From the NCBI RefSeq assembly GCF_032191835.1, contig NC_083223.1, positions 249,612,001 to 249,676,000 on the forward strand: a stretch of DNA of 64,000 bases, in the 5' to 3' direction. The translations under genes were made by a program, and so were the position numbers. Under the pieces are notes generated by a model. The model ran no database searches. It had not been told where the DNA came from and saw only the letters and a program-made list of their open reading frames with translations. Position 1 is the first letter of the stretch. Every line of letters starts with the position of its first letter. Positions 9,464-64,000 of the stretch are shown here, piece after piece. The stretch comes from Heteronotia binoei (taxonomy: Eukaryota).

Positions 9464-9583
9464 CAGGGGTGGCCAACGATAGCTCTCCAGATGTTTTTTT
9501 GCCTACAACTCCCATCAGCCCCAGCTGGGGCTGATGGGAGTTGTAGGCAAAAACATCTGGAGAGCTACCGTTGGCCATCCCTG
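9464..9583. mobile_element. 120-bp palindromic MITE (CAGGGGTGGCCAA termini)
   Basis: The whole element is a near-perfect hairpin. It is flanked by the direct repeat ACCTAACAG at 9455-9463 and 9584-9592. Confidence 0.85.
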
Positions 9584-31134: not shown

Positions 31135-31352
31135 GCTTACAATCTCCTGTATCTTCTCCCCTCACAACAGACACCCTGTAAGGTGGGTGGGGCTGAGAGG
31201 GCTATCACAGCAGTTGCCATTTCAAAGACAACTCTTGCGATAGCTATGGCTAACCCAAGGCCATTCCAGCAGTTGTAAGTGGAGGAGTGGGGAATCAAAC
31301 CCGGTTCTCCCAGATAAGAGTCTGCACACTTAACCACTACACCAAACTGGCT
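31135..31352 (-). mobile_element. MIR/Ther1-like SINE (Squam3-type)
   Basis: Reverse complement of 'gccagtttggtgtagtggttaagtgtgcagactcttatctgggagaaccgggtttgattcccc...'. Confidence 0.85.
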
Positions 31353-33531: not shown

Positions 33532-34193
33532 TCAAAACGCAGTGTACCGCAACCTTTCCGCGTACGCATCCCGCCCGAACCGCTGGACATCGTAGAGAGA
33601 GGATCGCGGGACGGGAGACAGCTGAACACGCTCGTATCCATACACGTCTCCAACGGTGGAAGCCGTAGCTGCCGAGCGACGCAGGGGACTTCTATCCCGG
33701 GCATAAAAGGAGGAAGACGCAGCTGCAGCAGCGGCAGCTACCGCTGCTGCAGTTCCCGAGGCAGGCAGCAAGGCCCTGTCGTAAGGGTCTAAGGTGGTAG
33801 AAAGGCGATTGGCCATGGCTGCGGCCGCTGTGGCTTGTGCTTGTGAGTACTGGGCGTACTGGGAATACTGGACCATGGTGTGCTCCGCATATGTGTCGTA
33901 TGCAGAAGCCCCGTACGCGGCGGACCTCGCGCGATACCGTTTATAGTAGTCCACCATTCCATAAGGGTCATCGTAATACATGGCCTCCCCATAGCCCGTG
34001 GGGTAGGGGGTGCGCACTGCTCCGTATTGCTCGCTATAAGTTTCGGTCAGCTCAGGCACTTGCCCCGTACGATCTACCGGGCACTCTTTAGACCAGTGAC
34101 CCTCCTTCCCACACCGGTAGCAGCCACTCTTGTCTCCCATCCCGGGCGCAGTCCTGAGCCGGCTGGTGGACAACTGCACGCGCATTCGTTTGC
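33532..34193 (-). CDS. RBM4B: RBM4/RBM4B-like coding exon 2 (CCHC zinc knuckle, Ala-rich C-terminus)
   Basis: Acceptor tttcttcaag|GC. Translation [43 protein letters not shown]...RDRSPLRR...RYTAF*. KASTK, PVDRTG and DYYKRYR residues are closer to human RBM4B than RBM4 (from memory). Confidence 0.93.
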
Positions 34194-37100: not shown

Positions 37101-38105
37101 TACTAAATGTTTGATACAAAACTTACCAGAAAGAACACTAACAGTGCAGCTTCTGCAAGATAAGTAAAAGGTTAACCTCACCAAAACCTCACTAAGTGCC
37201 TTAGGGTGGTGAACTTCTGGTAGTAAATGGCTGGTGTATGAGGGAGGAGACTGAATCACAGCAACTGAAGGCTGAAAAGACAACTGGGAAGAGGTAGATT
37301 TACTGTGCCTAGAAATGATGACTGATGGGATGGGAGAGATGTAAGTCAGTAGGTAAAGAAGCACATACTTGAGTGAAAGTTAGGCAGCAGTGGCACAGGA
37401 ATAAAAAGGAATTTCCTGTTTATGGGAAAGGACCCAGCAAGGGAATTTGGGGACAAAAAGCTTGTTGCTAAGATATTTGCCTGAGTTACACAAAGCCAAA
37501 AAGGAAAGCAGGTACAGCTGAAAACTAGTAGACTGGGCACTCTTACATATAAGCATTTCTTCCCTCAATGCTGTACAAAACTGGATGCAAAGAAAACCTA
37601 ATGGATTTTCTGAACAGTTGGAACAAAAAAATTAGGTAAGTTTTTTTGGTCTCAAAAAACACAACAAAACCCTAGCTCATGTTTCTTATAGTAATACTTA
37701 GCTGAGAATTTAAGGACATTTTTAAAGTATGGGTCTCTCTTAAAACTGTAGTACCTCATAGTCATAGATATGTCCCAAACTATCAGGGCTGTAAATCTAT
37801 ACCCCCAATTTTTTGAAAAATTGTATTAAAGCAGCCTTTATCATTATAGGAGCTTTTGCTTTTCAAAGTCTAAGTTTTCATTGAGAAAAACTGTCTTTCC
37901 CAAGATTCTAAAGTTTCATTTCTGAAGTTTTAAGCATAATCAATTAATCAAATAATTGGTTAGAAGGTAGCCTAGCCAAAGATTAAAATACAGCCAGTGG
38001 GACAGCCCTCTAAGATTCCTGCTGAAAAGACTGACTGCCTCAGTAAAGCAAGTGGCAAATGACACACACTTGTACATCCAGCTGTCAGCCAGACCCCTAT
38101 CCCAC

Positions 38106-38517
38106 CTTGAAACTCTGTGTTGTCAAGACCCCTGATGGCCTCAACAGCATCCTCTGCTCGCTCCATGTGCACAAAGGCATAATCCTTGACAATGTCGCAC
38201 TCAAGCACAGGGCCATACTCCTCAAACTTGGCCCGCAGCTCCAGGTTGGTGCAAGCAGTACTGATGTTGCCTACATGAAGCTTCGTGGAGGCTTTGCTCT
38301 TGTTCTTACTGGCCTCCACATTGATGCAGACACCATGTAACTTGTAGTGGTGCAGGTTGCGGATGGCGTCCTCAGCTGCAGTCTTGTCCTCAATATGCAC
38401 AAAGCCGTAGTTCTTGATAATATCACATTCCAGGACCCGTCCATACTGTTCAAAAAGAGAACGAATCTCTTGCTCTGTGGCCTCCCGAGGAAGGTTGCCT
38501 ATAAAGAGTTTCACCAT
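38106..38517 (-). CDS. RBM4B: RBM4/RBM4B-like coding exon 1 (RRM1 and RRM2)
   Basis: Kozak CCACCACCATGG; [26 protein letters not shown]...DNTEFQ; donor CAAG|gtggga at 38106/38105. 412 nt; CDS total 1074 nt, or 357 aa. Confidence 0.96.
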
Positions 38518-41130: not shown

Positions 41131-41149
41131 GGGTCTGGGTAAAAGTCGG

Positions 41150-44100
41150 ATCTACACGGATCTTCATGAATTCATATGATTTTTACATTGAAATGAAATC
41201 AAACCACTTTAATCCTGTAGATTCTGTCTTAGACTATAGGCAGGACCACAAAAATCATGCCTCCACGAATTCGTGGCGCCTCAGCAGTGCAAAAACTGGC
41301 TTCCAAAGCACGGATCCTCATGAATTCATATGATTTTTATGGTGAAATGAAATCAAACCACCATCATGTTGTAGATCCTCTCTTAGACTATAGGCAGCAA
41401 CAGAAAAATCATGCCTCCACGAATTGGTGGCGCCACAGCACTGAAAAAACATGTTTCCAAACCACGGATCCTCATGGATCCTCACGATTTTTGCCTTGGG
41501 CCACCACAAGATAACCAGCCAATCACATATCATGTCCATGGGCAGATGTTGGACCACAGAAATCATGGATCCACGGCTTCGTGGCAGCACCAGGGACCAA
41601 AAACTTACTTTTGGACCACGGATCCTCATGGATCCATGTGATTTTTGCTTCGGATCCCCCCAAGCCCTCCATCCAGTCACATATCATGTCCATGGGCAGA
41701 GTTTACACCACAGAAATCATGGATCCACGGCTTCGTGGCAGCGCCAGGGACCAAAAACTTGCTTTTGGACCACGGATCCTCATGGATCCACGTGATTTTT
41801 GCCTTGGATCCCCCCAAGCCATCCATCCAGTCATATATCATGTCCATGGGCACAGTTTACACCACAGAAATCATGGATCCACGGCTTCGTGGCAGCACCA
41901 GGGACCAAAAACTTGCTTTTGGACCACGGATCCTCATGGATCCACGTGATTTTTGCCTTGGATCCCCCCAAGCCGTCCATCCAGTCATATACCATGTCCA
42001 TGGGCACAGTTTACACCACAGAAATCATGGATCCACGGCTTCGTGGCAGCGCCAGGGACAAAAAACTTGCTTTTGGACCACGGATCCTCATGGATCCACA
42101 TGATTTTTGCCTTGGATCCCCCCAAGCCATCCATCCAGTCATATATCATGTCCATGGGCACAGTTTACACCACAGGAATCATGGATCCACGGCTTTGTGG
42201 CAGCACCAGGGACCAAAAACTTGCTTTTGGACCACGGATCCTCATGGATCCACATGATTTTTGCCTTGGATCCCCCCAAGCCATCCATCCAGTCATATAT
42301 CATGTCCATGGGCACAGTTTACACCACAGAAATCATGGATCCACGGCTTCGTGGCAGCACCAGGGACCAAAAACTTGCTTTTGGACCACGGATCCTCATG
42401 GATCCACGTGATTTTTGCCTTGGATCCCCCCAAGCCCTCCATACAGTCACATATCATGTCCATGGGCACAGTTTACACCACAGAAATCATGGATCCACGG
42501 CTTCGTGGCATCTCCAGAAATCAAAAACTTGGTTATAAACCACGGATCCTCATGGATCCACGTGATTTCTGCTTCGAACCCCCCAAGCCCTCCATACAGT
42601 CACATATCATGTCCATGGGCACAGTTTACACCACAGAAATCATGGATCCATGGCTTCGTGGCAGCTCCAGAAATCAAAAACTTGGTTATAAACCACGGAT
42701 CCTCATGGATCCACGTGATTTCTGCTTCAGACCCCCCAAGCTCTCCATACAGTCACATATCATGTCCATGGGCACAGTTTACACCACAGAAATAATGGAT
42801 CCACGGCTTCGTGGCAGCGCCAGGGACCAAAAACTTGCTTTTGGACCACGGATCCTCATGGATCCACGTGATTTTTGCCTTGGATCCCCCCAAGCCATCC
42901 ATCCAGTCATATATCATGTCCATGGGCACAGTTTACACCACAGAAATCATGGATCCACGGCTTCGTGGCAGCGCCAGAAATCAAAAACTTGGTTATAAAC
43001 CACGGATCCTCATGGATCCACGTGATTTCTGCTTCGGACCCCCCAAGCCCTCCATACAGTCACATATCATGTCCATGGGCACAGTTTACACCACAGAAAT
43101 CATGGATCCACGGCTTCGTGGCATCGCCAGAAATCAAAAACTTGCTTTTGGACCACGGATCCTCATGGATCCACATGATTTTTGCCTTGGATCCCCCCAA
43201 GCCATCCATCCAGTCACATATCATGTCCATGGGCACAGTTTACACCACAGAAATCATGGATCCACGGCTTCGTGGCATCTCCAGAAATAAAAAACTTGGT
43301 TATAAACCACGGATCCTCATGGATCCACGTGATTTCTGCTTCGAACCCCCCAAGCCCTCCATACAGTCACATATCATGTCCATTGGCACAGTTTACACCA
43401 CAGAAATCATGGATCCACGGCTTCGTGGCAGCTCCAGAAATCAAAAACTTTGTTATAAACCACGGATCCTCATGGATCCACGTGATTTCTGCTTCAGACC
43501 CCCCAAGCTCTCCATACAGTCACATATCATGTCCATGGGCACAGTTTACACCACAGAAATAATGGATCCACGGCTTCGTGGCAGCGCCAGGGACCAAAAA
43601 CTTGCTTTTGGACCACGGATCCTCATGGATGCACATGATTTTTGCCTTGGATCCCCCCAAGCCATCCATCCAGTCATATATCATGTCCATGGGCACAGTT
43701 TACACCACAGAAATCATGGATCCACGGCTTCGTGGCAGCGCCAGAAATCAAAAACTTGGTTATAAACCACGGATCCTCATGGATCCACGTGATTTCAACT
43801 TCGGACCCCCCAAGCCCTCCATACAGTCACATATCATGTCCATGGGCACAGTTTACACCACAGAAATCATGGATCCACGGCTTCGTGGCAGCGCCATAAA
43901 TCAAAAACTTGGTTATAAACCACGGATCCTCATGGATCCACATGATTTCTGCTTCGGACCCCCCAAGCCCTCCATACAGTCACATATCATGTCCATGGGC
44001 ACAGTTTACACCACAGAAATCATGGATCCACGGCTTCGTGGCATCTCCAGAAATCAAAAACTTGGTTATAAACCACGGATCCTCATGGATCCACGTGATT

Positions 44101-46600
44101 TCTGCTTCGAACCCCCCAAGCCCTCCATACAGTCACATATCATGTCCATGGGCACAGTTTACACCACAGAAATCATGGATCCACGGCTTCGTGGCAGCTC
44201 CAGAAATCAAAAACTTGGTTATAAACCACGGATCCTCATGGATCCACGTGATTTCTGCTTCAGACCCCCCAAGCTCTCCATACAGTCACATATCATGTCC
44301 ATGGGCACAGTTTACACCACAGAAATCATGGATCCACGGCTTCGTGGCAGCTCCAGAAATCAAAAACTTGGTTATAAACCACGGATCCTCATGGATCCAC
44401 ATGATTTTTGCCTTGGATCCCCCCAAGCCATCCATCCAGTCGTATATCATGTCCATGGGCACAGTTTACACCACAGAAATCATGGATCCACGGCTTCGTG
44501 GCAGCGCCAGAAATCAAAAACTTGGTTATAAACCACGGATCCTCATGGATCCACGTGATTTCTGCTTCGGACCCCCCAAGCCCTCCATACAGTCACATAT
44601 CATGTCCATGGGCACAGTTTACACCACAGAAATCATGGATCCACGGCTTCGTGGCAGCTCCAGAAATCAAAAACTTGGTTATAAACCACGGATCCTCATG
44701 GATCCACGTGATTTCTGCTTCGGACCCCCCAAGCCCTCCATACAGTCACATATCATGTCCATGGGCACAGTTTACACCACAGAAATCATGGATCCACGGC
44801 TTCGTGGCAGCTCCAGAAATCAAAAACTTGGTTATAAACCACGGATCCTCATGGATCCACGTGATTTCTGCTTCGGACCCCCCAAGCCCTCCATACAGTC
44901 ACATATCATGTCCATGGGCACAGTTTACACCACAGAAATCATGGATCCACGGCTTCGTGGCAGCTCCAGAAATCAAAAACTTGGTTATAAACCACGGATC
45001 CTCATGGATCCACGTGATTTCTGCTTCAGACTCCCCAAGCTCTCCATACAGTCACATATCATGTCCATGGGCACAGTTTACACCACAGAAATCATGGATC
45101 CACGGCTTCGTGGCAGCTCCAGAAATCAAAAACGTGCTTTTGGACCACGGATCCTCATGGATCCACATGATTTTTGCCTTGGATCCCCCCAAGCCATCCA
45201 TCCAGTCATATATCATGTCCATGGGCACAGTTTACACCGCAGAAATCATGGATCCACGGCTTCGTGGCAGCATCAGGGACCAAAAACTTGCTTTTGGACC
45301 ACGGATCCTCATGGATCCACGTGATTTCTGCTTCGGATCCCCCCAAGCCCTCCATACAGTCACATATCATGTCCATGGGCACAGTTTACACCACAGAAAT
45401 CATGGATCCACGGCTTCGTGGCAGCTCCAGAAATCAAAAACTTGGTTATAAACCACGGATCCTCATGGATCCACGTGATTTCTGCTTCGGACCCCCCAAG
45501 CCCTCCATACAGTCACATATCATGTCCATGGGCACAGTTTACACCACAGAAATCATGGATCCACGGCTTCGTGGCAGCTCCAGAAATCAAAAACTTGGTT
45601 ATAAACCACGGATCCTCATGGATCCACGTGATTTCTGCTTCAGACTCCCCAAGCTCTCCATACAGTCACATATCATGTCCATGGGCACAGTTTACACCAC
45701 AGAAATCATGGATCCACGGCTTCGTGGCAGCTCCAGAAATCAAAAACGTGCTTTTGGACCACGGATCCTCATGGATCCACATGATTTTTGCCTTGGATCC
45801 CCCCAAGCCATCCATCCAGTCATATATCATGTCCATGGGCACAGTTTACACCGCAGAAATCATGGATCCACGGCTTCATGGCAGCATCAGGGACCAAAAA
45901 CTTGCTTTTGGACCACGGATCCTCATGGATCCACGTGATTTCTGCTTCGGATCCCCCCAAGCCCTCAATCCAATCACATATCATGTCCATGGGCAGAGTT
46001 TGCACCACAGAAATCATGGATCCACGGCTTCGTGGCAGCATCAGGGACCAAAAACTTGCTTTTGGACCACGGATCCTCATGGATCCACGTGATTTCTCCT
46101 TCGGATCCCCCCAAGCACTCCATACAGCCACATGTCATGTCCATGAGCACAGTTTGCACTAAAGAAATCTTGGATCCACGGTTTCGTGGCAGCGCCAGGA
46201 AACAAAAACTTGGTTTTGAACCGCGGATCCTCATGCATCCACATGATTTCTGCTTCGGATCCCCCCGAACCCTCAATTGAATCACATATCATGTCTATGA
46301 GCAGAGTCTGCCGCACAGATATCGTGGCTCCACGGCTTCGTGGCAGCACCAGGGACCAAAAACTTGCTTTTGGACCACGGATCCTCATGGATCCATGTGA
46401 TTTTTGCTTCGGAACCCCCCAAGCCCTCAATGTAATCACATATCATGTCCAATGGCAGAGCATCTACCACAAAAATCATGGCTCCACAGCTTCGTGGCAG
46501 CACCATGGAACAAAAACTTGGTATTGGACCACGGATCCTCATGGATCCACATGATTTCTGCGTTGCATTCCACCATGATTTTTGGCAGACCTTGCACCAC
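41150..46600 (+). repeat. Left arm: about 35 tandem 153/154-bp satellite units (degenerate at both ends, fading to about 46980)
   Basis: Unit approx. CCACGGATCCTCATGGATCCACGTGATTTCTGCTTCGGACCCCCCAAGCCCTCCATACAGTCACATATCATGTCCATGGGCACAGTTTACACCACAGAAATCATGGATCCACGGCTTCGTGGCAGCTCCAGAAATCAAAAACTTGGTTATAAA. ORF-track offsets are 154 (41795, 41949, 42103, 42257, 42411), and 51-aa (153-nt) in-frame repeats also occur. Confidence 0.98.
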
Positions 46601-47314
46601 AGAAATGACAGGTCCATGGCTTTGTGCCGGTACCAAGGAGCCAAAATATGGTTTCGAAGTGCAGATCCTTCTTGATCTTAAAGTTATTCGCGTTGGGTCA
46701 AGGAAAACTCGACTTTATACCACATGTAATATCCATGGTCATAGCTTGCTGAACAACTATCACACATTCACATTTTTATTGTTCACCACACTCATTATCC
46801 ATCCAGATGTCACGTCTATGTCCAGCGTTTGCAAACTACAAATTGGATTTCGAGTACCTTGTATGCTGTCACGGTGTGCTTACATACTTTGAAACACTTA
46901 ATCTTCATGAATTCTGTGACTTTTCATTTTTGAATAGTTGGGCTCATCATGCGTGGTCCGCCTGAGGTTTCTTTCACATCACACAGCACGTCCATGACCA
47001 CAGAATAACCCACGAAAACCTCAGAACACTGCCAAGATGCCAAACACTGCTTCAAATACTTTGTGGCTTGTGCATTATGACATCACACCAATGTCTACAG
47101 GGTGACCAAACAAAAAAGTATCTGTAATGGTTCTACCTTACCATGAACACCACAGTAACATGAGAAATCAAAATAATGTCCATACCTTTCACTGCAAATA
47201 ACTGCATTCTGAACTTTCAGATGCCACCGAGTTGCAAAACTATCCAGATATTGTAATGGTCTTATCTTTGACTTCAAAACATCTTGCTCACTAGACAGAG
47301 GCCACCAAATTAGA

Positions 47315-50395: not shown

Positions 50396-51382
50396 TGTGA
50401 TCTGTTTGGAAGAGGGCAGAGGGCAAACAATACAACTATGGGGTTGGTGTGCCTTTTATGTGACCAAAAGCAACAGAGTCTGTGAATGTTAAGTCTACAG
50501 AAAGGATTGATGAGGGGGGACATGAGAACACTTTGTGAAATGATGTATGAGGTAAAATAGTAGATAATCCCACCCCCAGCCCCCCCAACCCCATGGGTAA
50601 AACTATTGCTTAAAATGTGGAATATACTGCAAAAGCAACATCTTTAAAAATCTCCACAGCTACTCAAAACTCCAGTATCCTGATAGAAGCCTTGCTGGGA
50701 AAAAAGCCATACCTGGCCCCACCCACTCTCCAGGAACAAATGACCGGTGCCAGGAAAAGTGTTGGCAGCCACCATGGCATGCCCAGGCACCACTATTGCG
50801 AACTTTTGGCTAACCACGTGCCTCATTTTTTCTGATCATGTGAACTTACACTGTGTAATTTGCCTTGAGTTTCAGGGAGAAAAAAGGACTAAGCAGAAAG
50901 TAAACAAAGATATATATATTCTATGCTTGTTGGCCCTTGTGAGAGAGGATGATGGACCAGTATATTTATCTAGCTATGCTCAGTTTATGTTCCTCCCATA
51001 TCCTTCTCCGTTACCCCTTCCACTGGAAATATTGTGGGTGCCTATACAGAACAGCCTTCTCAACAGTGGAACCCAGTCTCTTCAACTCTCTCTCAAATGA
51101 AGTTTGCATCAATCCCTAACGCCCTCCTGGAGTGCTCAGTTGATTCAAGGAGGTTGGTTGTGTTTGTTGTCATTTGATAATTTTTGATGCTGACTTGGAT
51201 TGATCGTTAGTTGCTTTAGGGATTATGTGAAGTTGAAAGATTACATATTACCACGTTGACAATGATAGTAAAGCATGTAATGGTTCAATATGAGAACATT
51301 AGTTTTGTTAAGGCTCCTGCTCTATTTGAGGTGCAACAACAACAGCTCTGCTTGCATATCTGAGTGGATCTAGTCTTCTTAC

Positions 51383-51901
51383 TAGGGTTGCCAGGGCCAA
51401 CTCAAGAGATGGCTGGGAACTTTGGGGGTGGAGCCAGGAGACTTTGGGGGTGGAGCCGGGAGCAAGGTTGTGACAAGGATACTTGAACTCTGAAAGGTAA
51501 TTTCCGCCACTGCATTAAAAGGTACTGCACACCTTTTAAATGCCTTCCCTCCATTTGGAAATAATGAAGGATAGGGGCACCTTCTTTTGGAGCTCATTGG
51601 ATTGGAGCCCCTGGTCCAATGCTTTTGAAACTTGGATGGGTTTTTGAAGAGAGGAAACGGATGCTGAAAATTTGCTGCCTCTACATCAAAAAACAGCCCT
51701 CCCCAAAGCCCAAAATACCCACAGATCAATTCTCTATTATACCCTATGGGAATCGATCTCCATAGGGGATAATGAAGTCCCCAAGAGACATTTATTTCCC
51801 CCTCCCTGCCCCCCCCTGCTTTCTGATGACCCTGAAGTGGGGGGAGGGCCTCCAAACTGGGGGATCTCTTTCCCCCCCCCCCCCCGGGATTGGCAATCCT
51901 A
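51383..51901. mobile_element. hAT-type MITE with 8-bp TSD
   Basis: TIRs TAGGGTTGCCA and TGGCAATCCTA. TSD CTTCTTAC (51375-51382) versus CTTGTTAC (51902-51909). Confidence 0.85.
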
Positions 51902-52130: not shown

Positions 52131-55100
52131 ATGGTCTTATATTGTAAGAGAAGCAACCCTTTCACAGTAGAAGAAGCCCTTCATATTCTAACTCATCCTG
52201 ATTATCAGAAGACTATAACTAATCCACCATGCAAGCCTCAGGGTGGTGATGTCTTCCTGTATTCTTTCAGTGGCTCTCCTCATAAAAAAGATGATTGGCG
52301 CTGTGATCAATATTCCTGGATCAATTGTGGTGTCAGACTATGGCCAAAGAAGGATCCAAAGTTGAGAAAATTCTATCATAAAATCAAAGGTGGTTCAAGC
52401 ACAGGCAACTTTGTAAGGCACAGTTATACACTGCTTGAACTTTCCTGTGAAATTGTCCTGTTACACTACATTGGAGATGAGAAGGAGTTCAAGCCACTTC
52501 CTCATGGCAATAGAAAGAAAAATTTGAAAAGATCACATGTACGGACCATGCCTTCTGTCATAGGACGTATTACAGATCACAATGCTAAGCCTTCCAAAAT
52601 CTATCAGGACCTCTGTAACAAACCTGTAACTGACTCAACCAGTATACCTGTATCTCAGCCACGAAATCTGGAGCAGATAAGAAACAAACTTAAATTTGAA
52701 AGACAACGTACACGAGTCAGCCATGATGATGTGTACAGTATAATAGAATTTACAGAACTCCTCGAAGGCTTCATCCATGATTACTCCCTGTATCCAGCAG
52801 TGATTGTTCTTATGGGCCTACCGGATATTTTATCTGAAATTGGGAAAGTTCTGTTGCTGAAGACTGAATTACCAATGCTTTTCTCATATGACACAACATT
52901 TCAGCTTGGAGACTTCTACCTATCTACTTTGATATTTCAAAATGTGCTTTTCACTGAATCACCATTGATTCCAGTGATGTTTATGATACATGATAGTAAG
53001 CATGAGGAAAATCACAGAAGATTTTTTGAAAACCTTTCAAAGCAGTGTCCTTCACTCAATTCAGAGAAGGTTGTCATGGTGTCTGACAGGGAGAAAGGAA
53101 TTTGTAAGGCTTTGGATCGTGTTTTGCTAAAGATTCACAGAGTGCTATGCTGGAATCACATCCGCAGAGACATCATGTTTTGGTTGAAAAAACATGGCGC
53201 CAAATCTGTAGATACCAAGATATACCTTACGGACTTTTTTGACCTCCTGAGGTCAAATTCTGAGGAGGAGTACACAGTCAAACTAGAGAAACTCAGCAGA
53301 AAGTGGAGCAGAGCATTCGTAGATTACTTTGATGAGGAGCTGCACCCAGCTATAATCAGTCATGCTGGTGCCTGGATTCTAAAGAGACTGAACATCTATA
53401 ACGAAAAGAGTGGAATCACAACAAATGTTTCTGAAAGTTTTCATGCTGCTCTAAAAAGACTTGCACAATGGAAAGAAATGTCCATGGAAGCAATGGTGTT
53501 AGCATTATATGCAATGCAAAATTTTTACTGGAGAGAAATTTTACGTGGACTATGCAACACTGGAAACCTTCATTTGCGATCTCAATTTCTCAGACACTCG
53601 AGATCACCAGAACACACCATCTTCCCTCATATAGCTTGTGATCCATCTGAAATCATGGATCTTGTACAAAGGGGAGAACTTCCACGACCCAAGAAAGATG
53701 AAATCTACGAGAAGGACCCATCGGTTTGTCAGGTAGTCCTTGCAGATTTCACTGTGCTAAGCAATTTAACAGCCACTTGTCCACAGCTTGGTGTGTTTGT
53801 GGTGAGGGGTGTTAAGGATAAAAATTATGTTGTTTCCCTTTTCCCCAAAGAGAGCTGCTCTTGCCCATCATCCAGGACTTGCTATCATATCATAGCTGCA
53901 AAAAAAACTATTGGCATGCCACCAGTACCCGGGAAGCCTCGCCGGCTGCAGCTCACACAGTTGAAGCGAAATAAAAGGCAGAAGACTAGATCAGGAAGAA
54001 AGTTCCCCAGACTTCAGGAAAACGTCACTGTAGCTGCTGCAGTAGATTCAATGCAGACTGCCACGGAGTTAGATTCCTTAAAAGCAGATCACCTTCTGAC
54101 CATGACACATCTAGAAAGCACCCAACCTCAAATGACCTCCACTCCAAAAGGCGTGCCAGAAAAATTGACAGTGGTCACTATTGATTCTTTGGATAATAGT
54201 CCCACATTCTCAGTTCACAGTGAGAAGTGTGCAGACACATCAGAGACCTATAAATCAGTTCCCCCATGGCACAACTGTACCTTCAAGATACTCAGTCTTC
54301 AAAAAAGGGGGCTTGTTGCCTCCGTTGCCAACATCTGTGTGTACGACTACGACATAGACACACTGAGGGGATCAAAGTGGATAAATGACCGCATAATTGA
54401 TGCATTTCTAGCCTCAAGGGTGATCATGGCCAAGGAGATGGGTCATGATGGAACAATTTTCACACTAAGTTGCCACTTCATACAGACCTTGCTGTGTCGA
54501 AGACTCTCTGTGCAAACTCTGAAGTACTGCTTGAAATATGGAGTGCTACAGAAGGATGTTTTGATCATTCCAGTTAATGACAGGCAAGTCCACTGGATAC
54601 TGATAGTCATCATATTCAAATGGAAGACCATGCTCTACCTGGACTCCAAACATGGATTGAACCACTCAGTGATTGAAGCCATAACATCCTTCTTATGTTG
54701 TCTGTATGAGATGGATTTGAAATGTTCGTATAGTTTTGCTGACTGGTCGTTTTTTGCACCAACTGATATACCCTGGCAAGACAACTCCAGTGACTGTGGT
54801 CCTTTCACATGTTCCATTGCACATGTGATTGCTTCTGCCACCCAACTGAATTTCACACAGGAGGATATGACTGCAGTTAGACCCTGGATTGCAAAAGAAA
54901 TAATCCAGTACAGTGGGAAAACATATCTGGAAAGAAAAGACAAATACATTCCACTGGAAATTGCTGTTGTCACTTACAAGGAGAGAGAAATTTTGAAAGA
55001 GAGTGGCATTACGGTTTCCAGATCATGTCCGGAGGGATGGAATGACACACTTAAGTATTGTGCGGATATTTTGCCTTCTTTGTTTCAGGGTCGCTGGTCA

Positions 55101-55268
55101 CAGTGCTTTCTGAAGGAGGGTTGCATGAAGCCCAGCAGTGACTTGACCATGGTTTACTGTGAAGGAAAATGCAAGGACTGGTACCACTGCTTTTGCATAG
55201 GCATGGACTCCAAAAATCTACCACAAATTTTCATGTGTCCAGACTGTCAATCCACAATGGCCAAATAG
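52131..55268 (+). CDS. Mutator/MULE-family transposase-like protein, 1045 aa: CG-1-like + MULE DDE + SWIM + Ulp1 protease + PHD
   Basis: Single open ORF. MULE motifs: SYD254TTF, VSD319REKGI.KAL, C340WNH343 and TTNVSE435SFH..LK. SWIM: C576-C578-C584-H586. Ulp1/C48: WINDRII, H821W, D838S, Q883..DC889G. PHD: C992/C998/C1010/C1014/H1019/C1022/C1036/C1039. Confidence 0.9.
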   Translation: MVLYCKRSNPFTVEEALHILTHPDYQKTITNPPCKPQGGDVFLYSFSGSPHKKDDWRCDQYSWINCGVRLWPKKDPKLRKFYHKIKGGSSTGNFVRHSYTLLELSCEIVLLHYIGDEKEFKPLPHGNRKKNLKRSHVRTMPSVIGRITDHNAKPSKIYQDLCNKPVTDSTSIPVSQPRNLEQIRNKLKFERQRTRVSHDDVYSIIEFTELLEGFIHDYSLYPAVIVLMGLPDILSEIGKVLLLKTELPMLFSYDTTFQLGDFYLSTLIFQNVLFTESPLIPVMFMIHDSKHEENHRRFFENLSKQCPSLNSEKVVMVSDREKGICKALDRVLLKIHRVLCWNHIRRDIMFWLKKHGAKSVDTKIYLTDFFDLLRSNSEEEYTVKLEKLSRKWSRAFVDYFDEELHPAIISHAGAWILKRLNIYNEKSGITTNVSESFHAALKRLAQWKEMSMEAMVLALYAMQNFYWREILRGLCNTGNLHLRSQFLRHSRSPEHTIFPHIACDPSEIMDLVQRGELPRPKKDEIYEKDPSVCQVVLADFTVLSNLTATCPQLGVFVVRGVKDKNYVVSLFPKESCSCPSSRTCYHIIAAKKTIGMPPVPGKPRRLQLTQLKRNKRQKTRSGRKFPRLQENVTVAAAVDSMQTATELDSLKADHLLTMTHLESTQPQMTSTPKGVPEKLTVVTIDSLDNSPTFSVHSEKCADTSETYKSVPPWHNCTFKILSLQKRGLVASVANICVYDYDIDTLRGSKWINDRIIDAFLASRVIMAKEMGHDGTIFTLSCHFIQTLLCRRLSVQTLKYCLKYGVLQKDVLIIPVNDRQVHWILIVIIFKWKTMLYLDSKHGLNHSVIEAITSFLCCLYEMDLKCSYSFADWSFFAPTDIPWQDNSSDCGPFTCSIAHVIASATQLNFTQEDMTAVRPWIAKEIIQYSGKTYLERKDKYIPLEIAVVTYKEREILKESGITVSRSCPEGWNDTLKYCADILPSLFQGRWSQCFLKEGCMKPSSDLTMVYCEGKCKDWYHCFCIGMDSKNLPQIFMCPDCQSTMAK

Positions 55269-56154
55269 AGTTTGAAATTGTTACACAGGTAGGTAACACA
55301 TACCAAATAAATTATGTGAACAGGTAAATCCACACACATGGTCTTCAGCATCATAGCTGAGCTGACCCCTTTCAGTGTATCTTGTATTTATGGAGAGTTT
55401 ACCTGATTTTCAAAATTCATTTCGGGGGAATTATGGTGCAGTGTTCCATGGTAGAGGGGATTCTAAAGTGCTACAGTGAAACTTCCTAATACCAGTTTTC
55501 TTTGTGACTAATGAGGCAATGTAGAAACACCAAGTTACATCCTTCTATGCATGATCACGAGTGCAACCTTTCCTACTGGAGTTCTGCTTGTGCACCCGAG
55601 AGATATACTACACCACACACAGAAAGTCTGCAGGTTCTCCCCCCTTAAAGAACAGCTGGCAATCACTTTGTACAATGTCTAGCTCCAGTGGAAATGTCAG
55701 TCAGGATGCAAGGGTCAGCATGGTCCGGTTAGTAACACCACAAGTGTTCGGGCTCCAGCACATGTGGAAATCAGCTGGATCCAACCTCTGGTTTTGAAGT
55801 AATATTATGAGTGTTCTGGAGATGCAGGGAGGCAGATAAACTGTAAAGGGTAAGAGGAAGGATCATACCTTGACTCCAACTCCTGTGCTATCAGCGTGTG
55901 TGTTGATCAGAGCCAGTGCACCCTGCAGGTGCACCTAGTGTTAGTGCATGGGTTACATCCATGCCTTGGAGAACTCTGGAAAGCACAGAGGCTGGATGGT
56001 TTGGAGAGAGCCCATGCACATATCCATTATACATGTTTAGGCATTGTTCAATAGTAAAGCCAAAAATATCTTTAGGATTAAAGCCCTAATCTCCACAGAT
56101 GACACTGAGTGGCATGAGGAATAAAACAAATGCTGGCCCTCTTTTCTGTAATTG

Positions 56155-56432
56155 GAGAGCCAGTTTGGTGTAGTGGTTAAGTGTGCGGACTCTTACCTGG
56201 GAGAACCGGGTTTGATTCCCCACTCCTCCACTTGCACCTGCTAGCATGGCCTTGGGTCAGCCAGAGCTCTGGCAGAGGTTGTCCTTGACAGGGCAGCTGC
56301 TGTGAGAGCCCTCTCCAGCCCCACCCACCTCACAGGGTGTCTGTTGTGGGGGAGGAAGGTAAAGGAGATTGTGAGCCGCTCTGAGACTCTTTGGAGTGGA
56401 GGGCGGGATATAAATCCGATATCTTCTTCTAA
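56155..56432 (+). mobile_element. MIR/Ther1-like SINE (Squam3-type), near full length
   Basis: gagagccagtttggtgtagtggttaagtgtgcggactc...gggcgggatataaatccgatatcttcttct. Confidence 0.88.
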
Positions 56433-56608
56433 TTGCAAAATGAAATAACATTCTAGATTCAGCATCTGATAATAGACAAGTAGTTCTACTGCTAGAAAAA
56501 GAAATCAATTTGACAACTTTGCTGCAATAATCTTAGAAATTTGTGGGACTTTCTTCCAATTAAAGGTTTACAGGCTCTTAATGCAGAAGACAAATCATGA
56601 CTCGTTTC

Positions 56609-56790
56609 CAGGGCTTTTTTTTTAAAAGCAGGAACTCCTTTGCATATTAGGCTACACACTCCTGATGTAGCCAATCCTGCAAGAGCTTAGAGGGCTCTTA
56701 GTATAGGTCATTCTGTAAGCTTTAGGAGGATTGGATACATCAGGGGTGTATTGCCTAATATGCAAAGGAGTTTCTGCTAAAAAAAAACAA
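56609..56790. mobile_element. Palindromic MITE
   Basis: gcaggaactcctttgcatattagg..tgatgtagccaatcct is mirrored by aggattggatacatca..cctaatatgcaaaggagtttctgc. Confidence 0.75.
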
Positions 56791-57524
56791 ACTCTGCTTG
56801 GTTCCATTACAATCACAATTTTAAATGTTAGTACTGAAGCAGTGCTCATGAGTTTGAGTTCGTGACTTAAGCTTTGACTGAACAAGATGCTGTGTGATTT
56901 CCTATCTTGCTTTTCAAATGTCACTATGATTCAGCAGCACTTTGAAAATGCAGTATGGAGATATATTACTGAGCAGATGGGAAGCAGGTCAATAACTTCC
57001 CATAACATCTTGGTATGGATTCCCACATAAGGGACAGAAAACTTTTAGGGGCCACATTTTTTTTGAAGTACGGAGACAGCACGGTATCTATGAAAAATGT
57101 GAAGCAAGTTCGTGAATTCATCCCCATAGAAATAATAATTTGTGGTGTTAAGGTTGGTGATGAGCAGGACCCTTTCCCATTTTCCCACACACAAGAACAC
57201 AGAGTTTGCTCTTAATGGGATTGAACAAGCAGAGTTTCTGTGGTCAGAGTTCCTGCACAAGACATCAGCAAAGTGCCTTTGAAAAAACTCAGCTTCTCAA
57301 ATGCATCATGAATCTTCCACTTGTGAACGTTGGAGTTGGAAGGCATAGAAGGTGCTGGTACTCACCTCCCTCCTCACAACCCCAGCCCCAGTGGTATCAA
57401 GGCATGTTTCTAGAGAAAGATGACAGTCATGATTATGACTATTACATATTATTTTTAATAATAATATAAATGAAGATGATAATCATCATCATTATTTAAT
57501 ATTATTATTTATTTATAGATGGTA

Positions 57525-59977: not shown

Positions 59978-60678
59978 GCCAGTTTGCTGTAGTGATTGAT
60001 TGCATGGACTCTTATCTGGGAGAACTGGATTTGATTCCCCACTCCTCCACTTGCACCAGCTGGAATGGTCTTGGGTCAGCCAGAGCTCTGGCAGAGGTTG
60101 TCCTTAAAAGGGCAGCTGCTGTGAGAGCCCTCTCCAGCCCCACCCACCTCACAGGGTGTCTGTTGTGGGGGAGGAAGGGAAAGGAGATTGTAGGCCACTC
60201 TGAGCCTCTGTCCTTGAAAGGGCAGCTGCTGTGAGAGCCCTCTCAGCCCCACCCACCTCACAGGGTGTCTTTTGTGGGGGACGAAAGTGAAGGAGATTGT
60301 AGGCCGCTCTGAGCCTCTGTCCTTGAAAGGGCAGCTGCTGTGAGAGCCTTCTCAACCCCACCCACCTCACAGGGTGTCTGTTGTGGGGGAGGAAGGGAAA
60401 AGAGATTGTAGGCTGCTCTGAGTCTCTGTCTTTGAAAGGGCAGCTGCTGTGAGAGCCCTCTCTAGCCCCACTCACCTCACCAGGTGTCTGTTGTGGGGGA
60501 GGAAGGGAAAGGAGATTGTAGGCCGCTATGAGCCTCTGTCCTTGAAAGGGCAGCTGCTGTGAGAGCTCTTTCAGCACCACCCACCTCACAGAGTGTCTGT
60601 TGTGGGGGAGGAAGATAAAGGAGAATGTGAGCCGCTCTTAGGCTTTGAGATTCAGAGTGGAGGGTGGGATATGAATCA
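59978..60678 (+). mobile_element. Squam3-type SINE with its 3' body amplified five times in tandem (about 110-bp unit)
   Basis: ggcagctgctgtgagagcc recurs at 60111, 60221, 60330, 60439 and 60549. Confidence 0.92.
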
Positions 60679-60795
60679 AAGTCACTGCTGGGCTTCATGC
60701 AACCCTCCTTCAGAAAGCACTGTAAGCAGCGGCCCTGAAACGAAGAAGGCAAAATATCAGTACAATACTTAAGTATGTCATTCCATCCCTCTGGA
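60679..60795 (-). pseudogene. Inverted 117-bp fragment of the transposase 3' region
   Basis: Reverse complement aligns ungapped to 55028-55144 with 8 mismatches by hand count (PEGWND.LKYC.DILPS.FQGR..QCFLKEGCMKPSSD). Confidence 0.93.
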
Positions 60796-61407: not shown

Positions 61408-61543
61408 CAGGGGTGGTCAACGGTAGTTCTCCAGAAGTTTTTTGCCTACAACTCCCATCAGCCCAGCAAGCATGGCTGATGGCTGGGGCTGATGGGAGTT
61501 GTAGGCAAAAAACTTCTGGAGAGCTATCGTTGGCCCCCCCCTG
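61408..61543. mobile_element. Palindromic hAT-type MITE (same family as 9464-9583)
   Basis: CAGGGGTGGTCAAC...GTTGGCCCCCCCCTG. 8-bp TSD GTGTAGAA at 61400-61407 and 61544-61551. Confidence 0.88.
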
Positions 61544-61619: not shown

Positions 61620-64000
61620 TCTTCTCATAAGAGGACCCATGAGGATCCGTGCCGCAAAATCATGTTCTGGATCCATGGTGCTGCCACGAAACCATGGATC
61701 CATTATATCTGTGGAGCAAGCTCTTTCCATGGACGCAGCATGAGATTGGATGGTGAGCTTGGGATGAGCCAATGCAGATATCATGAGGATCCATGAGTAT
61801 ATGTGCTTCAAAGCCATGTTTTCGCTCCATGATGTTGCCACGATGCCAAGGATCTATGATTTCCGGGGTGTAAACTCATGAGGATCCATGGTGCAAAACC
61901 AAGTTCTTCTTCCATGGTGCTGCCACGAAGCCGTGGATCCATGATTTCTGTGGTAGAAGCTCTGCCCATTGACATGATATGCGATTGTATGGTGAGGTTG
62001 GGGGGATCCGAGGCAAAATTAATGAGGATTCTGGAGGATCCGTGGTCCAATACTACATTTTTGGTCTCTGGCGCTGCCACGAAGCCGTGGATCCACGATT
62101 TCTGTGGTGAAAGCTGTACCCATGGACATGATATGTGATTGGATAGTGAGCTTGGGGTGGCCCAAAGTAAAAGTCAGGAGGATTCATGAGGATCCGTGGT
62201 CCAAAAGCAAGTTTTTGGTCCCTGGCGTTGCCACGAAGCTGTGAATCCACGATTTCTGTGCTGCAAACTCTGCCCATGGCATGATATGTGAATGGATGGA
62301 GGGCTTGGGGGGATCCAAAGCAAAAATTATGTGGAACCATGAGGATCCGTGGTCCAAAACCAAGTTTTTGCTCTTTGGCGCTTCCACAAAGCTGTGTATC
62401 TATGATTTCTGTGGTGCAAGCTCTACCCATGGATATGATATGTGATTAAATAGTGAGCTTGGGGTGGCCCAAAGTAAAAATCATGAGGATTCATGAGGAT
62501 CCGTGATTCAAAACCAAGTTTTTGGTCCCTGGCGCTGCCACGAAACCGTGGATCCACGATTTCTGTGGTGTAAACTGTGCCCATGGGCATGATATGTGAC
62601 TGTATGGCGGGCTTGGGGGGTCCGAAGCAGAAATCACGTGGATCCATGAGGATCCGTGGTTTATAACCAAGTTTTTGATTTCTGGAGATGCCACGAAGCC
62701 GTGGATCCATGATTTCTGTGGTGTAAACTGTGCCCATGGACATGATATACGACTGGATGGATGGCTTGGGGGGATCCAAGGCAAAAATCATGTGGATCCA
62801 TGAGGATCCGTGGTCCAAAAGCAAGTTTTTGATTTCTGGCGCTGCCACGAAGCCGTGGATCCATGATTTCTGTGGTGTAAACTGTGCCCATGAACATGAT
62901 ATATGACTGGATGGACGGCTTGGGGGGATCCAAGGCAAAAATCATGTGGATCCATGAGGATCCGTGGTCCAAAAGCAAGTTTTTGGTCGCTGCGCTGCCA
63001 CGAAGCCATGGATCCATGATTTCTGTGGTGTAAGCTGTGCCTATGGACATAATATATGACTGGATGGATGGCTTGGGGGGATCCAAGGCAAAAATCATGT
63101 GGATCCATGAGGATCCGTGGTCCAAAAGCAAGTTTTTGGTCCCTGGCGATGCCACGAAGCCGTGGATCCATGATTTCTGTGGTGTAAACTGTGCCCATGG
63201 ACATGATATGTGACTGTATGGAGAGCTTGGGGGGTCTGAAGCAGAAATCACGTGGATCCATGAGGATCCGTGGTTTATAACCAAGTTTTTGATTTCTGGA
63301 GCTGCCACGAAGCCGTGGATCCATGATTTCTGTGGTGTAAACTGTGCCCATGGACATGATATGTGACTGTATGGAGGGCTTGGGGGGTCCGAAGCAGAAA
63401 TCACATGGATCCATGAGGATCCGTGGTTTATAACCAAGTTTTTGATTTCTGGAGCTGCCACGAAGCCGTGGATCCATGATTTCTGTGTTGTAGACTCTGC
63501 TCATGGACATGATACGTGATTCGATTGAGGGCTTGGGAGGATCTGAAGCAGAAATCATGTGGATCCATGAGGATCCGTGATTCAAAACCAAGTTTTTGGT
63601 CCCTGGCGCTGCCATGAAACCATGGAGCCATGATTTCTGTGGTGTAAACTGTGCCCATGGACATGATATGTGGCTGTATGGAGGACTTGGGGGGATCCGA
63701 AGCAGAAATCACATGGATCCATGAGGATCCGTGGTCCAAAAGCAAGTTTTTGGTCCCTGGCGCTGCCACGAAGCCATGGATCCATGATTTCTGTGGTGTA
63801 AACTGTGCCCATGAACATGATATATGACTGGATGGACGGCTTGGGGGGATCCAAGGCAAAAATCATGTGGATCCATGAGGATCCGTGGTCCAAAAGCAAG
63901 TTTTTGGTCGCTGCGCTGCCACGAAGCCATGGATCCATGATTTCTGTGGTGTAAGCTGTGCCTATGGACATAATATATGACTGGATGGATGGCTTGGGGG
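61620..64000 (-). repeat. Right arm: at least 15 units of the same 153/154-bp satellite, inverted, continuing past the window end
   Basis: Reverse complement of the left-arm unit (ggatccatgaggatccgtgg...ccacgaagccgtggatccatgatttctgtggtgtaaactgtgcccatgg). Degenerate at the inner end (61620-62560). Confidence 0.98.

What the first reader, a model, noticed from the sequence alone, without database searches (positions are those of the whole stretch)
52131..55268. Intact five-domain transposase: CG-1-like / MULE DDE / SWIM / Ulp1 / PHD
Seen: a 1045-aa ORF with no stops or frameshifts. All expected catalytic and ligand residues are present: DDE candidates D254, D319 and E435, the MULE CxxH at 340-343, SWIM CxCx5CxH, Ulp1 H821-D838-C889 with oxyanion Q883, and a C4HC3 PHD. 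Known: MULE+SWIM+Ulp1 combinations occur in plant and some animal Mutators. Inference: adding a CG-1-like N-terminus and a terminal PHD gives one protein that could bind DNA, cut and paste, deSUMOylate and read chromatin. It may be active or recently active, and possibly horizontally acquired.
Basis: partly seen in the sequence, partly recalled or inferred. Interest (0 to 1): 0.85.

Follow-up and report, generated by a model that had tools for sequence, protein, structure and literature searches.

The report
Intact Mutator/Foldback transposase in a gecko
A gecko genome carries a complete, apparently still functional "jumping-gene" enzyme of the Mutator family, a family once thought absent from vertebrates. 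It lies between two opposed arrays of the 154-bp repeat that it most likely mobilises, and a lizard relative has turned into a cutting-dead host-like gene.

Summary
Window 52131-55268 (+) is an uninterrupted 1045-aa ORF, and all five claimed domains check out:
- a CG-1-type DNA-binding domain of the WRKY/GCM1 clan
- a MULE DDE core with D254, D319, E435 and C340xxH343
- a SWIM CxCx5CxH motif
- a Ulp1/SENP protease with H821, D838, Q883 and C889
- a C4HC3 PHD finger

The window comes from a gecko. The protein belongs to a large animal MULE clade: 279 cluster representatives score below 1e-30, from fish, amphibians, lizards, a crustacean and unnamed assemblies.

Horizontal acquisition is not supported. 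The three squamate copies branch like their hosts. Synonymous divergence from the Elgaria copy (1.43) exceeds that of the neighbouring host gene CCDC87 (1.00).

The gene is not a conserved syntenic host gene, since in Elgaria it lies on another chromosome. The Elgaria copy has lost D254, H343 and E435 but keeps an intact ORF and the Ulp1 residues, so it is a candidate domesticated derivative.

In the gecko the ORF sits in the 15-kb loop between two inverted arrays of a 154-bp repeat. Earlier notes of this scan, on other DNA of this genome, describe the same repeat as non-coding Foldback transposons lacking a transposase. Remnants of that repeat also lie beside the Elgaria and Phrynocephalus copies, and none were found in control DNA.

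Best reading: this is the autonomous transposase of a squamate Mutator/Foldback family. Current activity is unproven.

The parts
52131..55268 (+). Intact 1045-aa transposase ORF (stop codon included)
52164..52475 (+). CG-1-type DNA-binding domain of the WRKY/GCM1 clan, aa 12-115, with the conserved D59xxxW63 motif
   Evidence: The isolated domain scores 28.3 bits on Pfam CG-1, and 39 of 43 family N-termini hit CG-1. The AF2 model has pLDDT 92.5 and one helix followed by five strands. The top 12 Swiss-Prot fold hits are CAMTA CG-1 domains. PDB matches are SSR4, GCM, WOPR, NAC and WRKY at Z 5-8.5.
52866..53480 (+). MULE/IS256-type DDE catalytic core, aa 246-450: D254, D319, E321, C340xxH343, E435
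53811..53930 (+). SWIM zinc finger, aa 561-600 (C576, C578, C584, H586)
54330..54908 (+). Ulp1/SENP (C48) cysteine protease domain, aa 734-926 (H821, D838, Q883, C889)
55104..55247 (+). C4HC3 PHD finger, aa 992-1039
41131..46565 (+). Left arm: two outer variant units followed by about 33 regular units of the 154-bp repeat. Nearly all its CpGs sit in CCACG motifs.
61638..64000 (-). Right arm: the same 154-bp repeat in inverted orientation. It runs off the end of the window.
46901..46928 (+). Degenerate terminal-type unit just inside the left arm
60679..60795 (-). 117-bp inverted fragment of the ORF's 3' part (aa 964-1005), 93% identical: remnant of a second copy

Best explanation
The ORF is the transposase gene of an old, vertically persisting squamate Mutator-like (MuDR/Foldback superfamily) DNA transposon. 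In this gecko it lies in the loop of a foldback-type element of at least 23 kb, whose two arms are opposed arrays of the family's 154-bp repeat.

Inferred mechanism:
- The N-terminal CG-1/WRKY-GCM1 domain binds repeated sites in the arms. The candidate core is CCACG, four per unit.
- The DDE/CxxH core, helped by SWIM, cuts and rejoins DNA as in MULE and IS256 enzymes.
- The C-terminal Ulp1 domain removes SUMO from itself or from host chromatin or repair factors.
- The PHD finger directs the complex to particular chromatin, probably H3K4-methylated chromatin.

The non-coding 154-bp foldback elements elsewhere in this genome would be its non-autonomous partners.

Shown here: the ORF, the domains, the catalytic residues, the fold, the inverted arms, the linkage of unit remnants to the gene in three lizard lineages, purifying selection, and no sign of horizontal transfer.

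Inferred: the DNA-binding specificity, that this protein moves the foldback elements, and present-day activity.
For: The ORF is intact and the catalytic and ligand residues are present.

The fold is that of a DDE transposase. ISCth4 scores Z 14.4, Hermes 11.4 and P element 10.4.

The family holds many multi-member clusters with truncated members, as transposons do.

Inverted 154-bp arrays flank the ORF, and the arms are 93-96% alike.

A conserved block of about 55 nt of the unit recurs near the gene in other lizards. It lies about 500 and 940 bp upstream of the Elgaria ORF, with a third copy in inverse orientation about 6.1 kb upstream. A tandem array starts 10 kb downstream of the Phrynocephalus copy. 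There were no hits in 22.8 kb of Elgaria control DNA or in 41 kb of the rest of the window.

Earlier scan notes report non-coding foldback elements of the same 154-bp unit with 9-bp target duplications, and a spacer without a transposase. I did not test those two claims.

The gene is not syntenic. The RBM14-CCS-CCDC87-RBM4 block is conserved in Elgaria on CM068574.1, while the homolog lies on CM068556.1.

Decayed copies exist. The Phrynocephalus copy lacks aa 1-168 and has a frameshift, and a Logan contig carries frameshifts and stops. A 117-bp remnant of a second copy lies in the window.

dN/dS is 0.19 against Elgaria and 0.22 against the closer copy.
Against: - The right terminus lies outside the window, so termini and target-site duplication could not be checked.
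- No short TIRs lie next to the ORF.
- The 15-kb loop is littered with SINE- and CR1-type repeats, so this copy is not young.
- No RNA evidence was found for the ORF.
- The ORF is absent from the protein collection although the window's CCDC87 is present.
- The Phrynocephalus array has the orientation of the gecko's left arm although it lies downstream of the gene.
- The copy number of the ORF in this genome is unknown.
- The tree matching the host phylogeny would also fit a host gene.
Confidence: 0.6

Rival explanations
1. A domesticated, immobile host gene of this gecko that happens to keep all catalytic residues, as THAP9 or PGBD5 do. Host-level selection maintains it, and the flanking arrays are relics or coincidental.
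For: The ORF is intact despite an old, repeat-invaded neighbourhood and no adjacent TIRs. All domains show strong purifying selection. The tree is congruent with the hosts and dS is host-like. The Elgaria relative is clearly gene-like and DDE-dead.
Against: There is no synteny with Elgaria. No homolog turned up in the annotated proteomes of five other geckos or most squamates. Copies in two other lineages are decayed. The full DDE/CxxH set is kept. Unit remnants are linked to the gene in three lineages.
Confidence: 0.22
2. A dead transposon relic whose ORF is intact only because the copy was immobilised recently. It has no present function for the element or the host.
For: No expression evidence was found. 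The loop has been invaded by other repeats. The arms are only 86-92% homogeneous internally.
Against: A 3.1-kb ORF would be expected to pick up a stop or frameshift after roughly 0.2-0.8% neutral divergence (my estimate). The arms and the in-window fragment have already diverged by 4-7%.
Confidence: 0.12
3. A recent horizontal acquisition.
For: Distribution among annotated squamates is patchy. Relatives occur in distant animals.
Against: The tree gives (gecko,(Elgaria,Phrynocephalus)) with 100/100 support for the squamate clade, the inner Elgaria-Phrynocephalus fork being weaker (94/76), and a caecilian as sister. dS between gecko and Elgaria is 1.43 for this gene against 1.00 for CCDC87, and four-fold sites give 0.92 against 0.67.
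Confidence: 0.04

Closest known systems
Mutator-like elements (MULE/MuDR superfamily) and their bacterial cousins, the IS256 family (solved example: ISCth4 TnpA)
   Same: DDE triad with about 65 and 116 residues between the catalytic residues, a CxxH motif after strand 5, a helical insertion domain, an N-terminal WRKY/GCM1-clan DNA-binding domain and a C-terminal SWIM. The closest solved fold is ISCth4, and catalytic residues align one to one (Babu 2006, PMC1702500).
   Different: The DNA-binding domain is the zinc-less CG-1 type rather than the FAR1/WRKY/FLYWCH zinc type. The host is an amniote, whereas a 2019 survey found no credible vertebrate MULE transposase (PMC6446971). No short TIRs were seen; the arms are kilobase-long arrays.
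Mutator and Ginger1 transposases with C-terminal Ulp1 (with or without PHD) in Hydra, lancelet and plants (Bao 2010, PMC2836005; plant KI-MULEs)
   Same: The transposase is fused to a Ulp1 C48 protease with a complete catalytic set and, in some, a PHD finger.
   Different: Those reports are from invertebrates and plants. I found no paper in the searched library describing the CG-1 + MULE + SWIM + Ulp1 + PHD combination.
Foldback elements (Drosophila FB; the Tm1 Mutator/Foldback family of root-knot nematodes, PMC3169594) and Rehavkus (PHD finger plus minisatellite; PMC6446971)
   Same: Long inverted arms built of tandem subrepeats, a mostly non-coding family with rare coding copies, and a transposase related to MULEs. 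Rehavkus pairs a PHD-bearing MULE-like transposase with a minisatellite.
   Different: The host is a reptile, the unit is 154 bp and the arms are about 5.4 kb. I could not compare sequences with FB, Tm1 or Rehavkus transposases because none was available in the tools.
CAMTA transcription factors (CG-1 domain, PF03859)
   Same: The N-terminal 115 residues are a true CG-1 homolog by sequence and fold. Human CAMTA1 aligns at rmsd 2.9 A over 126 residues with 26% identity. The DxxxW recognition-loop motif of Holm 2022 (PMC9252788) is conserved.
   Different: There are no TIG, ankyrin or IQ domains. Here the domain heads a transposase. DNA specificity was not tested.
Zisupton/KDZ transposons (my first guess)
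   Same: Large fish and fungal DNA transposons, which from memory carry SWIM and SUMO-protease associations.
   Different: Rejected. The core hits Pfam MULE and Transposase_mut, and its nearest solved fold is IS256, not KDZ.

Membership tests
MULE/MuDR-IS256 DDE transposases | DDE triad on an RNase H-like fold, with D after strand 1, D after strand 4 and E on the helix after a helical insertion | tested here: met
   Secondary structure of model m2b6a6fa9c101. ISCth4 scores Z 14.4 over 234 residues. The family profile aligns D319 to D241 and E435 to E348. Conservation is 90-94%. Inter-residue distances could not be measured because no coordinates are returned.
MULE/MuDR-IS256 DDE transposases | C/DxxH motif downstream of the second D | tested here: met
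   C340/H343 align to ISCth4 C262/H265 and are conserved in 129 and 132 of 142 relatives.
MULE/MuDR-IS256 DDE transposases | Pfam MULE (PF10551) at or above the gathering score | tested here: met
   28.8 bits against 27.6, a narrow margin.
MULE/MuDR-IS256 DDE transposases | Terminal inverted repeats and a 9-10-bp target-site duplication | tested here: inconclusive
   Inverted arms are present, but the right end is outside the window. No short TIRs lie next to the ORF. The 9-bp duplication is known only from an earlier scan note that I did not check.
Foldback-type elements | Long inverted arms made of tandem subrepeats around a loop | tested here: met
   The left arm is 41131-46565 (about 35 units, + orientation). 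The right arm is 61638 to beyond 64000 (inverted). The arms are 93-96% alike and the loop is 15 kb.
Foldback-type elements | The family's cis-repeat is physically linked to the transposase in independent lineages | tested here: met
   Unit-like blocks lie in the Elgaria and Phrynocephalus loci (E 2e-6 and 3e-5). None was found in 22.8 kb plus 41 kb of control DNA. In Phrynocephalus the orientation is not the expected one.
CG-1 domain (PF03859) | Profile score above the gathering score, and a fold of one helix followed by five strands with a DxxxW loop | tested here: met
   28.3 bits against 23.5 for aa 1-135, and 39 of 43 relatives hit CG-1. D59 and W63 are at least 90% conserved.
CG-1 domain (PF03859) | Sequence-specific binding to CGCG/CGTG-type boxes | not testable with these tools
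   The only evidence is circumstantial: 114 of 154 CpGs in the left arm lie in CCACG contexts.
Ulp1/SENP C48 proteases | His-Asp-Cys triad and oxyanion Gln in the conserved motifs | tested here: met
   Alignment to SENP1 at 3.5e-21. The four residues are 17/19 to 19/19 conserved in relatives that carry the domain.
PHD finger | C4HC3 ligand set | tested here: met
   The eight ligands are invariant in the 8 full-length sequences aligned, which represent 4 distinct lineages. PDB PHD fingers match at about 1e-4. Pfam gives 19.8 bits, below its cutoff of 24. The first pair is spaced Cx5C.
SWIM zinc finger | CxCxnCxH motif after the transposase core | tested here: met
   The motif is about 100% conserved, but profile and fold matches are only weak and there is no Pfam hit.
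Domesticated transposase gene | Single-copy, syntenic orthologs across the host clade | tested here: not met
   The Elgaria homolog is on CM068556.1, while the conserved RBM14-CCS-CCDC87-RBM4 block is on CM068574.1. No hits were found in other annotated geckos. Decayed copies exist elsewhere.

The most novel reading that the evidence does not exclude
This ORF is the live autonomous transposase of a foldback family with hundreds of ends in a living reptile. That would make it the first working Mutator/Foldback system in an amniote. It would recognise its 154-bp arm repeats through a CAMTA-type CG-1 domain. It would also imply that the CAMTA DNA-binding domain and this transposase domain share a transposon-linked origin, as WRKY, FAR1, GCM1 and FLYWCH do.
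Probability: 0.3. Interest if true: 0.8.

Novelty: new variant of a known kind. Interest (0 to 1): 0.62.

Why it matters
- A 2019 survey asked whether MULEs are really absent from vertebrates. Here is a complete, catalytically equipped one in an amniote, with relatives in fish and amphibians.
- It gives a candidate enzyme for the orphan 154-bp foldback elements this scan found elsewhere in the genome, which makes that system testable.
- It links the CG-1 domain of CAMTA transcription factors to a transposase DNA-binding module. I found no paper stating that link.
- The gecko (active-type), Phrynocephalus (decayed) and Elgaria (DDE-dead but intact and constrained) copies capture three fates of one transposase lineage. 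The Elgaria copy is a possible new domesticated Ulp1/PHD gene.
- An active vertebrate MULE could also become a genetic tool.

Tried and rejected
- Zisupton/KDZ identity. This was my first guess. Pfam and fold evidence place the core with MULE/IS256, so I rejected it.
- Short TIRs beside the ORF. A sensitive inverted-repeat search in the gecko and Elgaria loci found only unrelated SINE, CR1 and MITE copies.
- An extended inverted duplication beyond the arrays. None was found apart from the 117-bp fragment.
- Reads. Only metatranscriptome contigs of a related sample were available. They cover the high-copy SINE-like repeats at 51300-51900 and 56100-56700 and a few unique flank pieces, but not the ORF. 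They show neither expression nor copy number.
- Element ends in distant relatives. L002 and L003 are one locus, with tandem repeats downstream of the ORF but no upstream sequence. L006 has a repeated 30-nt inverted motif around the ORF, but I could not find a matching target duplication.
- One contig look-up failed for lack of a slot and one had no DNA.
- Horizontal transfer. Rejected on the tree and on dS.
- Naive slicing of the array into fixed 154-nt units lost register because of indels, so that consensus was discarded. Only the CpG context counts are used.
Full report
**1. Observation**

Window 52131-55268 (+) holds a 1045-codon ORF with no stop. The window contains no N runs.

Pfam gives the following for the whole protein:
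- Peptidase_C48 at E 1.9e-18
- MULE at 28.8 bits (cutoff 27.6)
- CG-1 at 21.6 bits (cutoff 23.5)
- PHD at 19.8 bits (cutoff 24)
- Transposase_mut weakly

PDB sequence search gives SENP1/SENP2 at 1e-20 over aa 734-925, and H3K4me3-reading PHD fingers (PHF13, PHF2, TAF3, BPTF) at 1e-4 to 1e-2. So the Ulp1 and MULE calls stood at once, while CG-1, PHD and SWIM needed more work.

**2. Catalytic core**

An exhaustive HMMER search found 6407 cluster representatives at E<=1e-3 and 279 at E<=1e-30. Several cover the whole five-domain length: P0003 (1034 aa, 36% identity), P0008 and P0017.

In an alignment of the best 150, the key residues are conserved as follows:
- D254 121/133, D319 132/141, E321 136/142
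- C340 129/142, H343 132/142, E435 120/132
- SWIM C576, C578, C584 and H586 in about 85/85

The AlphaFold2 model of aa 135-650, built on 45 sequences, has pLDDT 84.6. It shows beta1 (D254 follows it), beta2, beta3, alpha, beta4 (D319 follows it), alpha, beta5 (C340xxH343 follow it), a helical insertion, and then the helix carrying E435. This is the arrangement Babu et al. 2006 (PMC1702500) describe for MULE/TnpA enzymes.

Fold searches put the IS256-family ISCth4 transposase first: Foldseek E 9e-6, and VIA Z 14.4 over 234 residues. Hermes, P element, RAG1, retroviral integrases, Tn5 and Mos1 follow.

A profile of the family hits ISCth4 by sequence at E 2.9e-4. After allowing for a 3-residue tag offset, it aligns D319, C340/H343 and E435 to D241, C262/H265 and E348. 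These are the published active-site residues (PMC7780238). I could not measure distances because the tool returns no coordinates.

**3. N-terminal domain**

I aligned 43 N-termini of the family (A1). Of these, 39 hit Pfam CG-1 (best E 1.7e-13). The gecko domain alone scores 28.3 bits, above the cutoff.

The model has pLDDT 92.5 and one helix followed by five strands. Its 12 best Swiss-Prot fold matches are all CAMTA CG-1 domains, followed by WRKY and NAC. In the PDB the best matches are SSR4 (Z 8.5), GCM (8.3), WOPR (8.2), NAC and WRKY.

This is exactly the CG-1/Gti1-Pac2/NAM subgroup of the WRKY/GCM1 clan defined by Holm 2022, including its DxxxW loop motif (PMC9252788). Here the motif is D59/W63, and both residues are at least 90% conserved.

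MULEs normally carry a WRKY/GCM1-type DNA-binding domain at this place, so this clade simply uses the CG-1 version. I found no paper in the library that links CG-1 to transposases.

**4. Ulp1, PHD, SWIM**

The alignment to SENP1 (3.5e-21) matches VHW, DS and Q..SDCG to H821, D838, Q883 and C889. These residues are 17/19 to 19/19 conserved in relatives that carry the domain.

The eight PHD ligands are invariant in the 8 full-length sequences aligned, which represent 4 distinct lineages.

Only about 18 of the 150 best representatives carry Ulp1, and about 10 carry PHD. Many of these representatives are fragments.

Mutator and Ginger1 transposases with Ulp1, with or without PHD, are already known from Hydra, lancelet and plants (PMC2836005).

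**5. Host and neighbours**

The 868-aa ORF at 24018-26624 is CCDC87. It is 84% identical to Gekko japonicus, 78-80% to other geckos and 64% to Elgaria, so the window comes from a gecko.

The window also holds RBM14-like and RBM4-like exons. Elgaria has the same RBM14-CCS-CCDC87-RBM4 block on CM068574.1.

**6. Transposon or host gene, vertical or horizontal**

The only close full-length homolog is Elgaria LOC134396010: 59% identity and full length, on CM068556.1 next to a PRY/SPRY gene. It is therefore not syntenic.

DNA similarity between the two loci is limited to the ORF plus 40 bp upstream.

dN/dS is 0.19, and every domain is constrained. dS is 1.43 against 1.00 for CCDC87 between the same species, and four-fold sites give 0.92 against 0.67.

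A maximum-likelihood tree of the core gives (gecko,(Elgaria,Phrynocephalus)). The squamate clade has 100/100 support, the inner Elgaria-Phrynocephalus fork is weaker (94/76), and a caecilian is sister. This is the host topology, so recent horizontal transfer is not supported.

Several facts argue against an old domesticated gene:
- No homolog appeared in the annotated proteomes of five other geckos or most squamates.
- The ORF itself is not in the protein collection, although the window's CCDC87 is.
- The Phrynocephalus copy lacks aa 1-168 and has one frameshift. A Logan contig, 82% identical in DNA, has frameshifts and stops, though its dN/dS against the gecko is 0.22.
- A 117-bp, 93%-identical fragment of the ORF lies inverted at 60679-60795.

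**7. A dead-catalytic relative**

In Elgaria the motifs read SYTETF (D254 to T), CWNR (H343 to R) and NMPPSF (E435 to P). D319, SWIM, D59/W63, the Ulp1 tetrad and the PHD ligands are kept, and its branch is the longest of the three. That is the signature of a domesticated or neofunctionalised derivative.

The named amphibian proteins are also degenerate. The Spea protein shows A, D and D in place of D319, H343 and E435, and the caecilian protein has H in place of D319.

The gecko, Phrynocephalus and Paramormyrops copies keep the full set.

**8. The flanking arrays**

The ORF lies between a 5.4-kb array of a 154-bp unit (41131-46565, + orientation) and the same unit inverted (61638 to the window end). 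The arms are 93-96% alike.

An insertion into a satellite would leave direct arrays, not inverted ones.

Earlier notes of this scan (AI notes that I did not verify) describe, elsewhere in this genome, a 10.9-kb non-coding foldback transposon made of two opposed arrays of the same unit. They report a 9-bp target duplication, a few hundred ends, and a spacer lacking a transposase. An arm of 5.4 kb is half of 10.9 kb.

My own test was to search the outer units against other loci. A conserved block of about 55 nt (...AAAAAC.TG.TTCCA...CACGGATCCTCATGAATTCATATGATTTTTAC...) recurs in these places:
- at L001 9058-9105 and 9452-9502, which is about 940 and 500 bp upstream of the Elgaria ORF in the same orientation as the gecko's left arm
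- once inverted at L001 3838-3865
- at L005 20813-20863, where a tandem array of about 163 bp begins 10 kb downstream of the Phrynocephalus copy

There were no hits in the Elgaria CCDC87 locus (22.8 kb) or in window 1-41000. The repeat has therefore travelled with the gene since the squamate ancestor. That is what one expects of a transposase and its cis-sequences.

Caveats:
- The Phrynocephalus array has the orientation of a left arm.
- Elgaria shows no downstream units.
- The gecko's right terminus is outside the window.

**9. Binding-site lead**

CpG observed/expected is 0.50-0.53 in the arms, against 0.13-0.30 around them. Of the 154 CpGs in the left arm, 114 lie in CCACG contexts, four per unit. 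Plant CAMTA CG-1 domains bind CGCG/CGTG boxes (my background knowledge), so this is a reasonable but untested candidate site.

The left terminus lies about 2.6 kb upstream of the RBM4 start codon. That fits the MULE habit of inserting near promoters, but it is a single case.

**10. Activity**

In favour: the ORF is complete, every catalytic residue is present, and both arms are there.

Against: the loop carries several SINE and CR1 copies, no transcript was found, and copy number is unknown.

I put the probability that this is the cognate transposase of the foldback family at about 0.6, and the probability that this copy is active now at about 0.3.

**11. Verdict**

This is a new vertebrate variant of the known Mutator/Foldback kind. 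It has a CG-1-type DNA-binding domain, a probable non-autonomous partner family, and a candidate domesticated derivative in another lizard.

Noticed in passing
L001:10001-13129 (Elgaria multicarinata LOC134396010): The full-length homolog has lost three catalytic hallmarks of the transposase (D254 to T, H343 to R, E435 to P). It keeps an intact ORF, the CG-1 motif, SWIM, the Ulp1 catalytic residues and the PHD ligands. It is a candidate domesticated Ulp1/PHD gene. The Spea and caecilian relatives are also degenerate at DDE sites.
   Followed up: partly
P0064 (1394 aa, unnamed source): This protein carries five to six tandem copies of the CG-1-like transposase N-terminal domain, much as multi-FLYWCH proteins do. 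It may be a transposase-derived DNA-binding protein.
   Followed up: no
window 60679-60795 (-): A 117-bp piece of the ORF's 3' part, 93% identical, lies inverted about 840 bp inside the right arm, wedged between a SINE-derived tandem array and a CR1-like repeat. Its divergence is similar to that between the two arms, so the structure may once have been a larger palindrome with two ORF copies.
   Followed up: partly
window 60099-60677, also 56158-56416, 31135-31352 and 20159-20433: A SINE-like repeat is dispersed in the window and locally amplified into a 109-bp tandem array of about 5 copies. The same repeat is extremely abundant in the metatranscriptome contigs.
   Followed up: no
window 5586-7040, 24018-26624 and 33532-38517: The host block RBM14-like / CCDC87 / RBM4-like is conserved in order and orientation with Elgaria CM068574.1. 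The foldback element begins about 2.6 kb upstream of the RBM4 start codon.
   Followed up: partly
window 56609-56796 and 61410-61540: Two short near-perfect hairpins (84-nt and 55-nt arms), MITE-like, inside the loop of the element.
   Followed up: no
L002:3600-5800 and 9332-10600: A distant full-length relative (36% identity, unnamed ENA/Logan sample) also has degenerate tandem repeats and a 244-bp array downstream of its transposase ORF. This recalls the minisatellites reported for Rehavkus and Phantom MULEs.
   Followed up: partly
L001:931-1368 and 13376-13875: Two copies of a MITE-like element of about 450 bp, with its own terminal inverted repeats, flank the Elgaria gene in opposite orientation. 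They are not the MULE's ends.
   Followed up: partly
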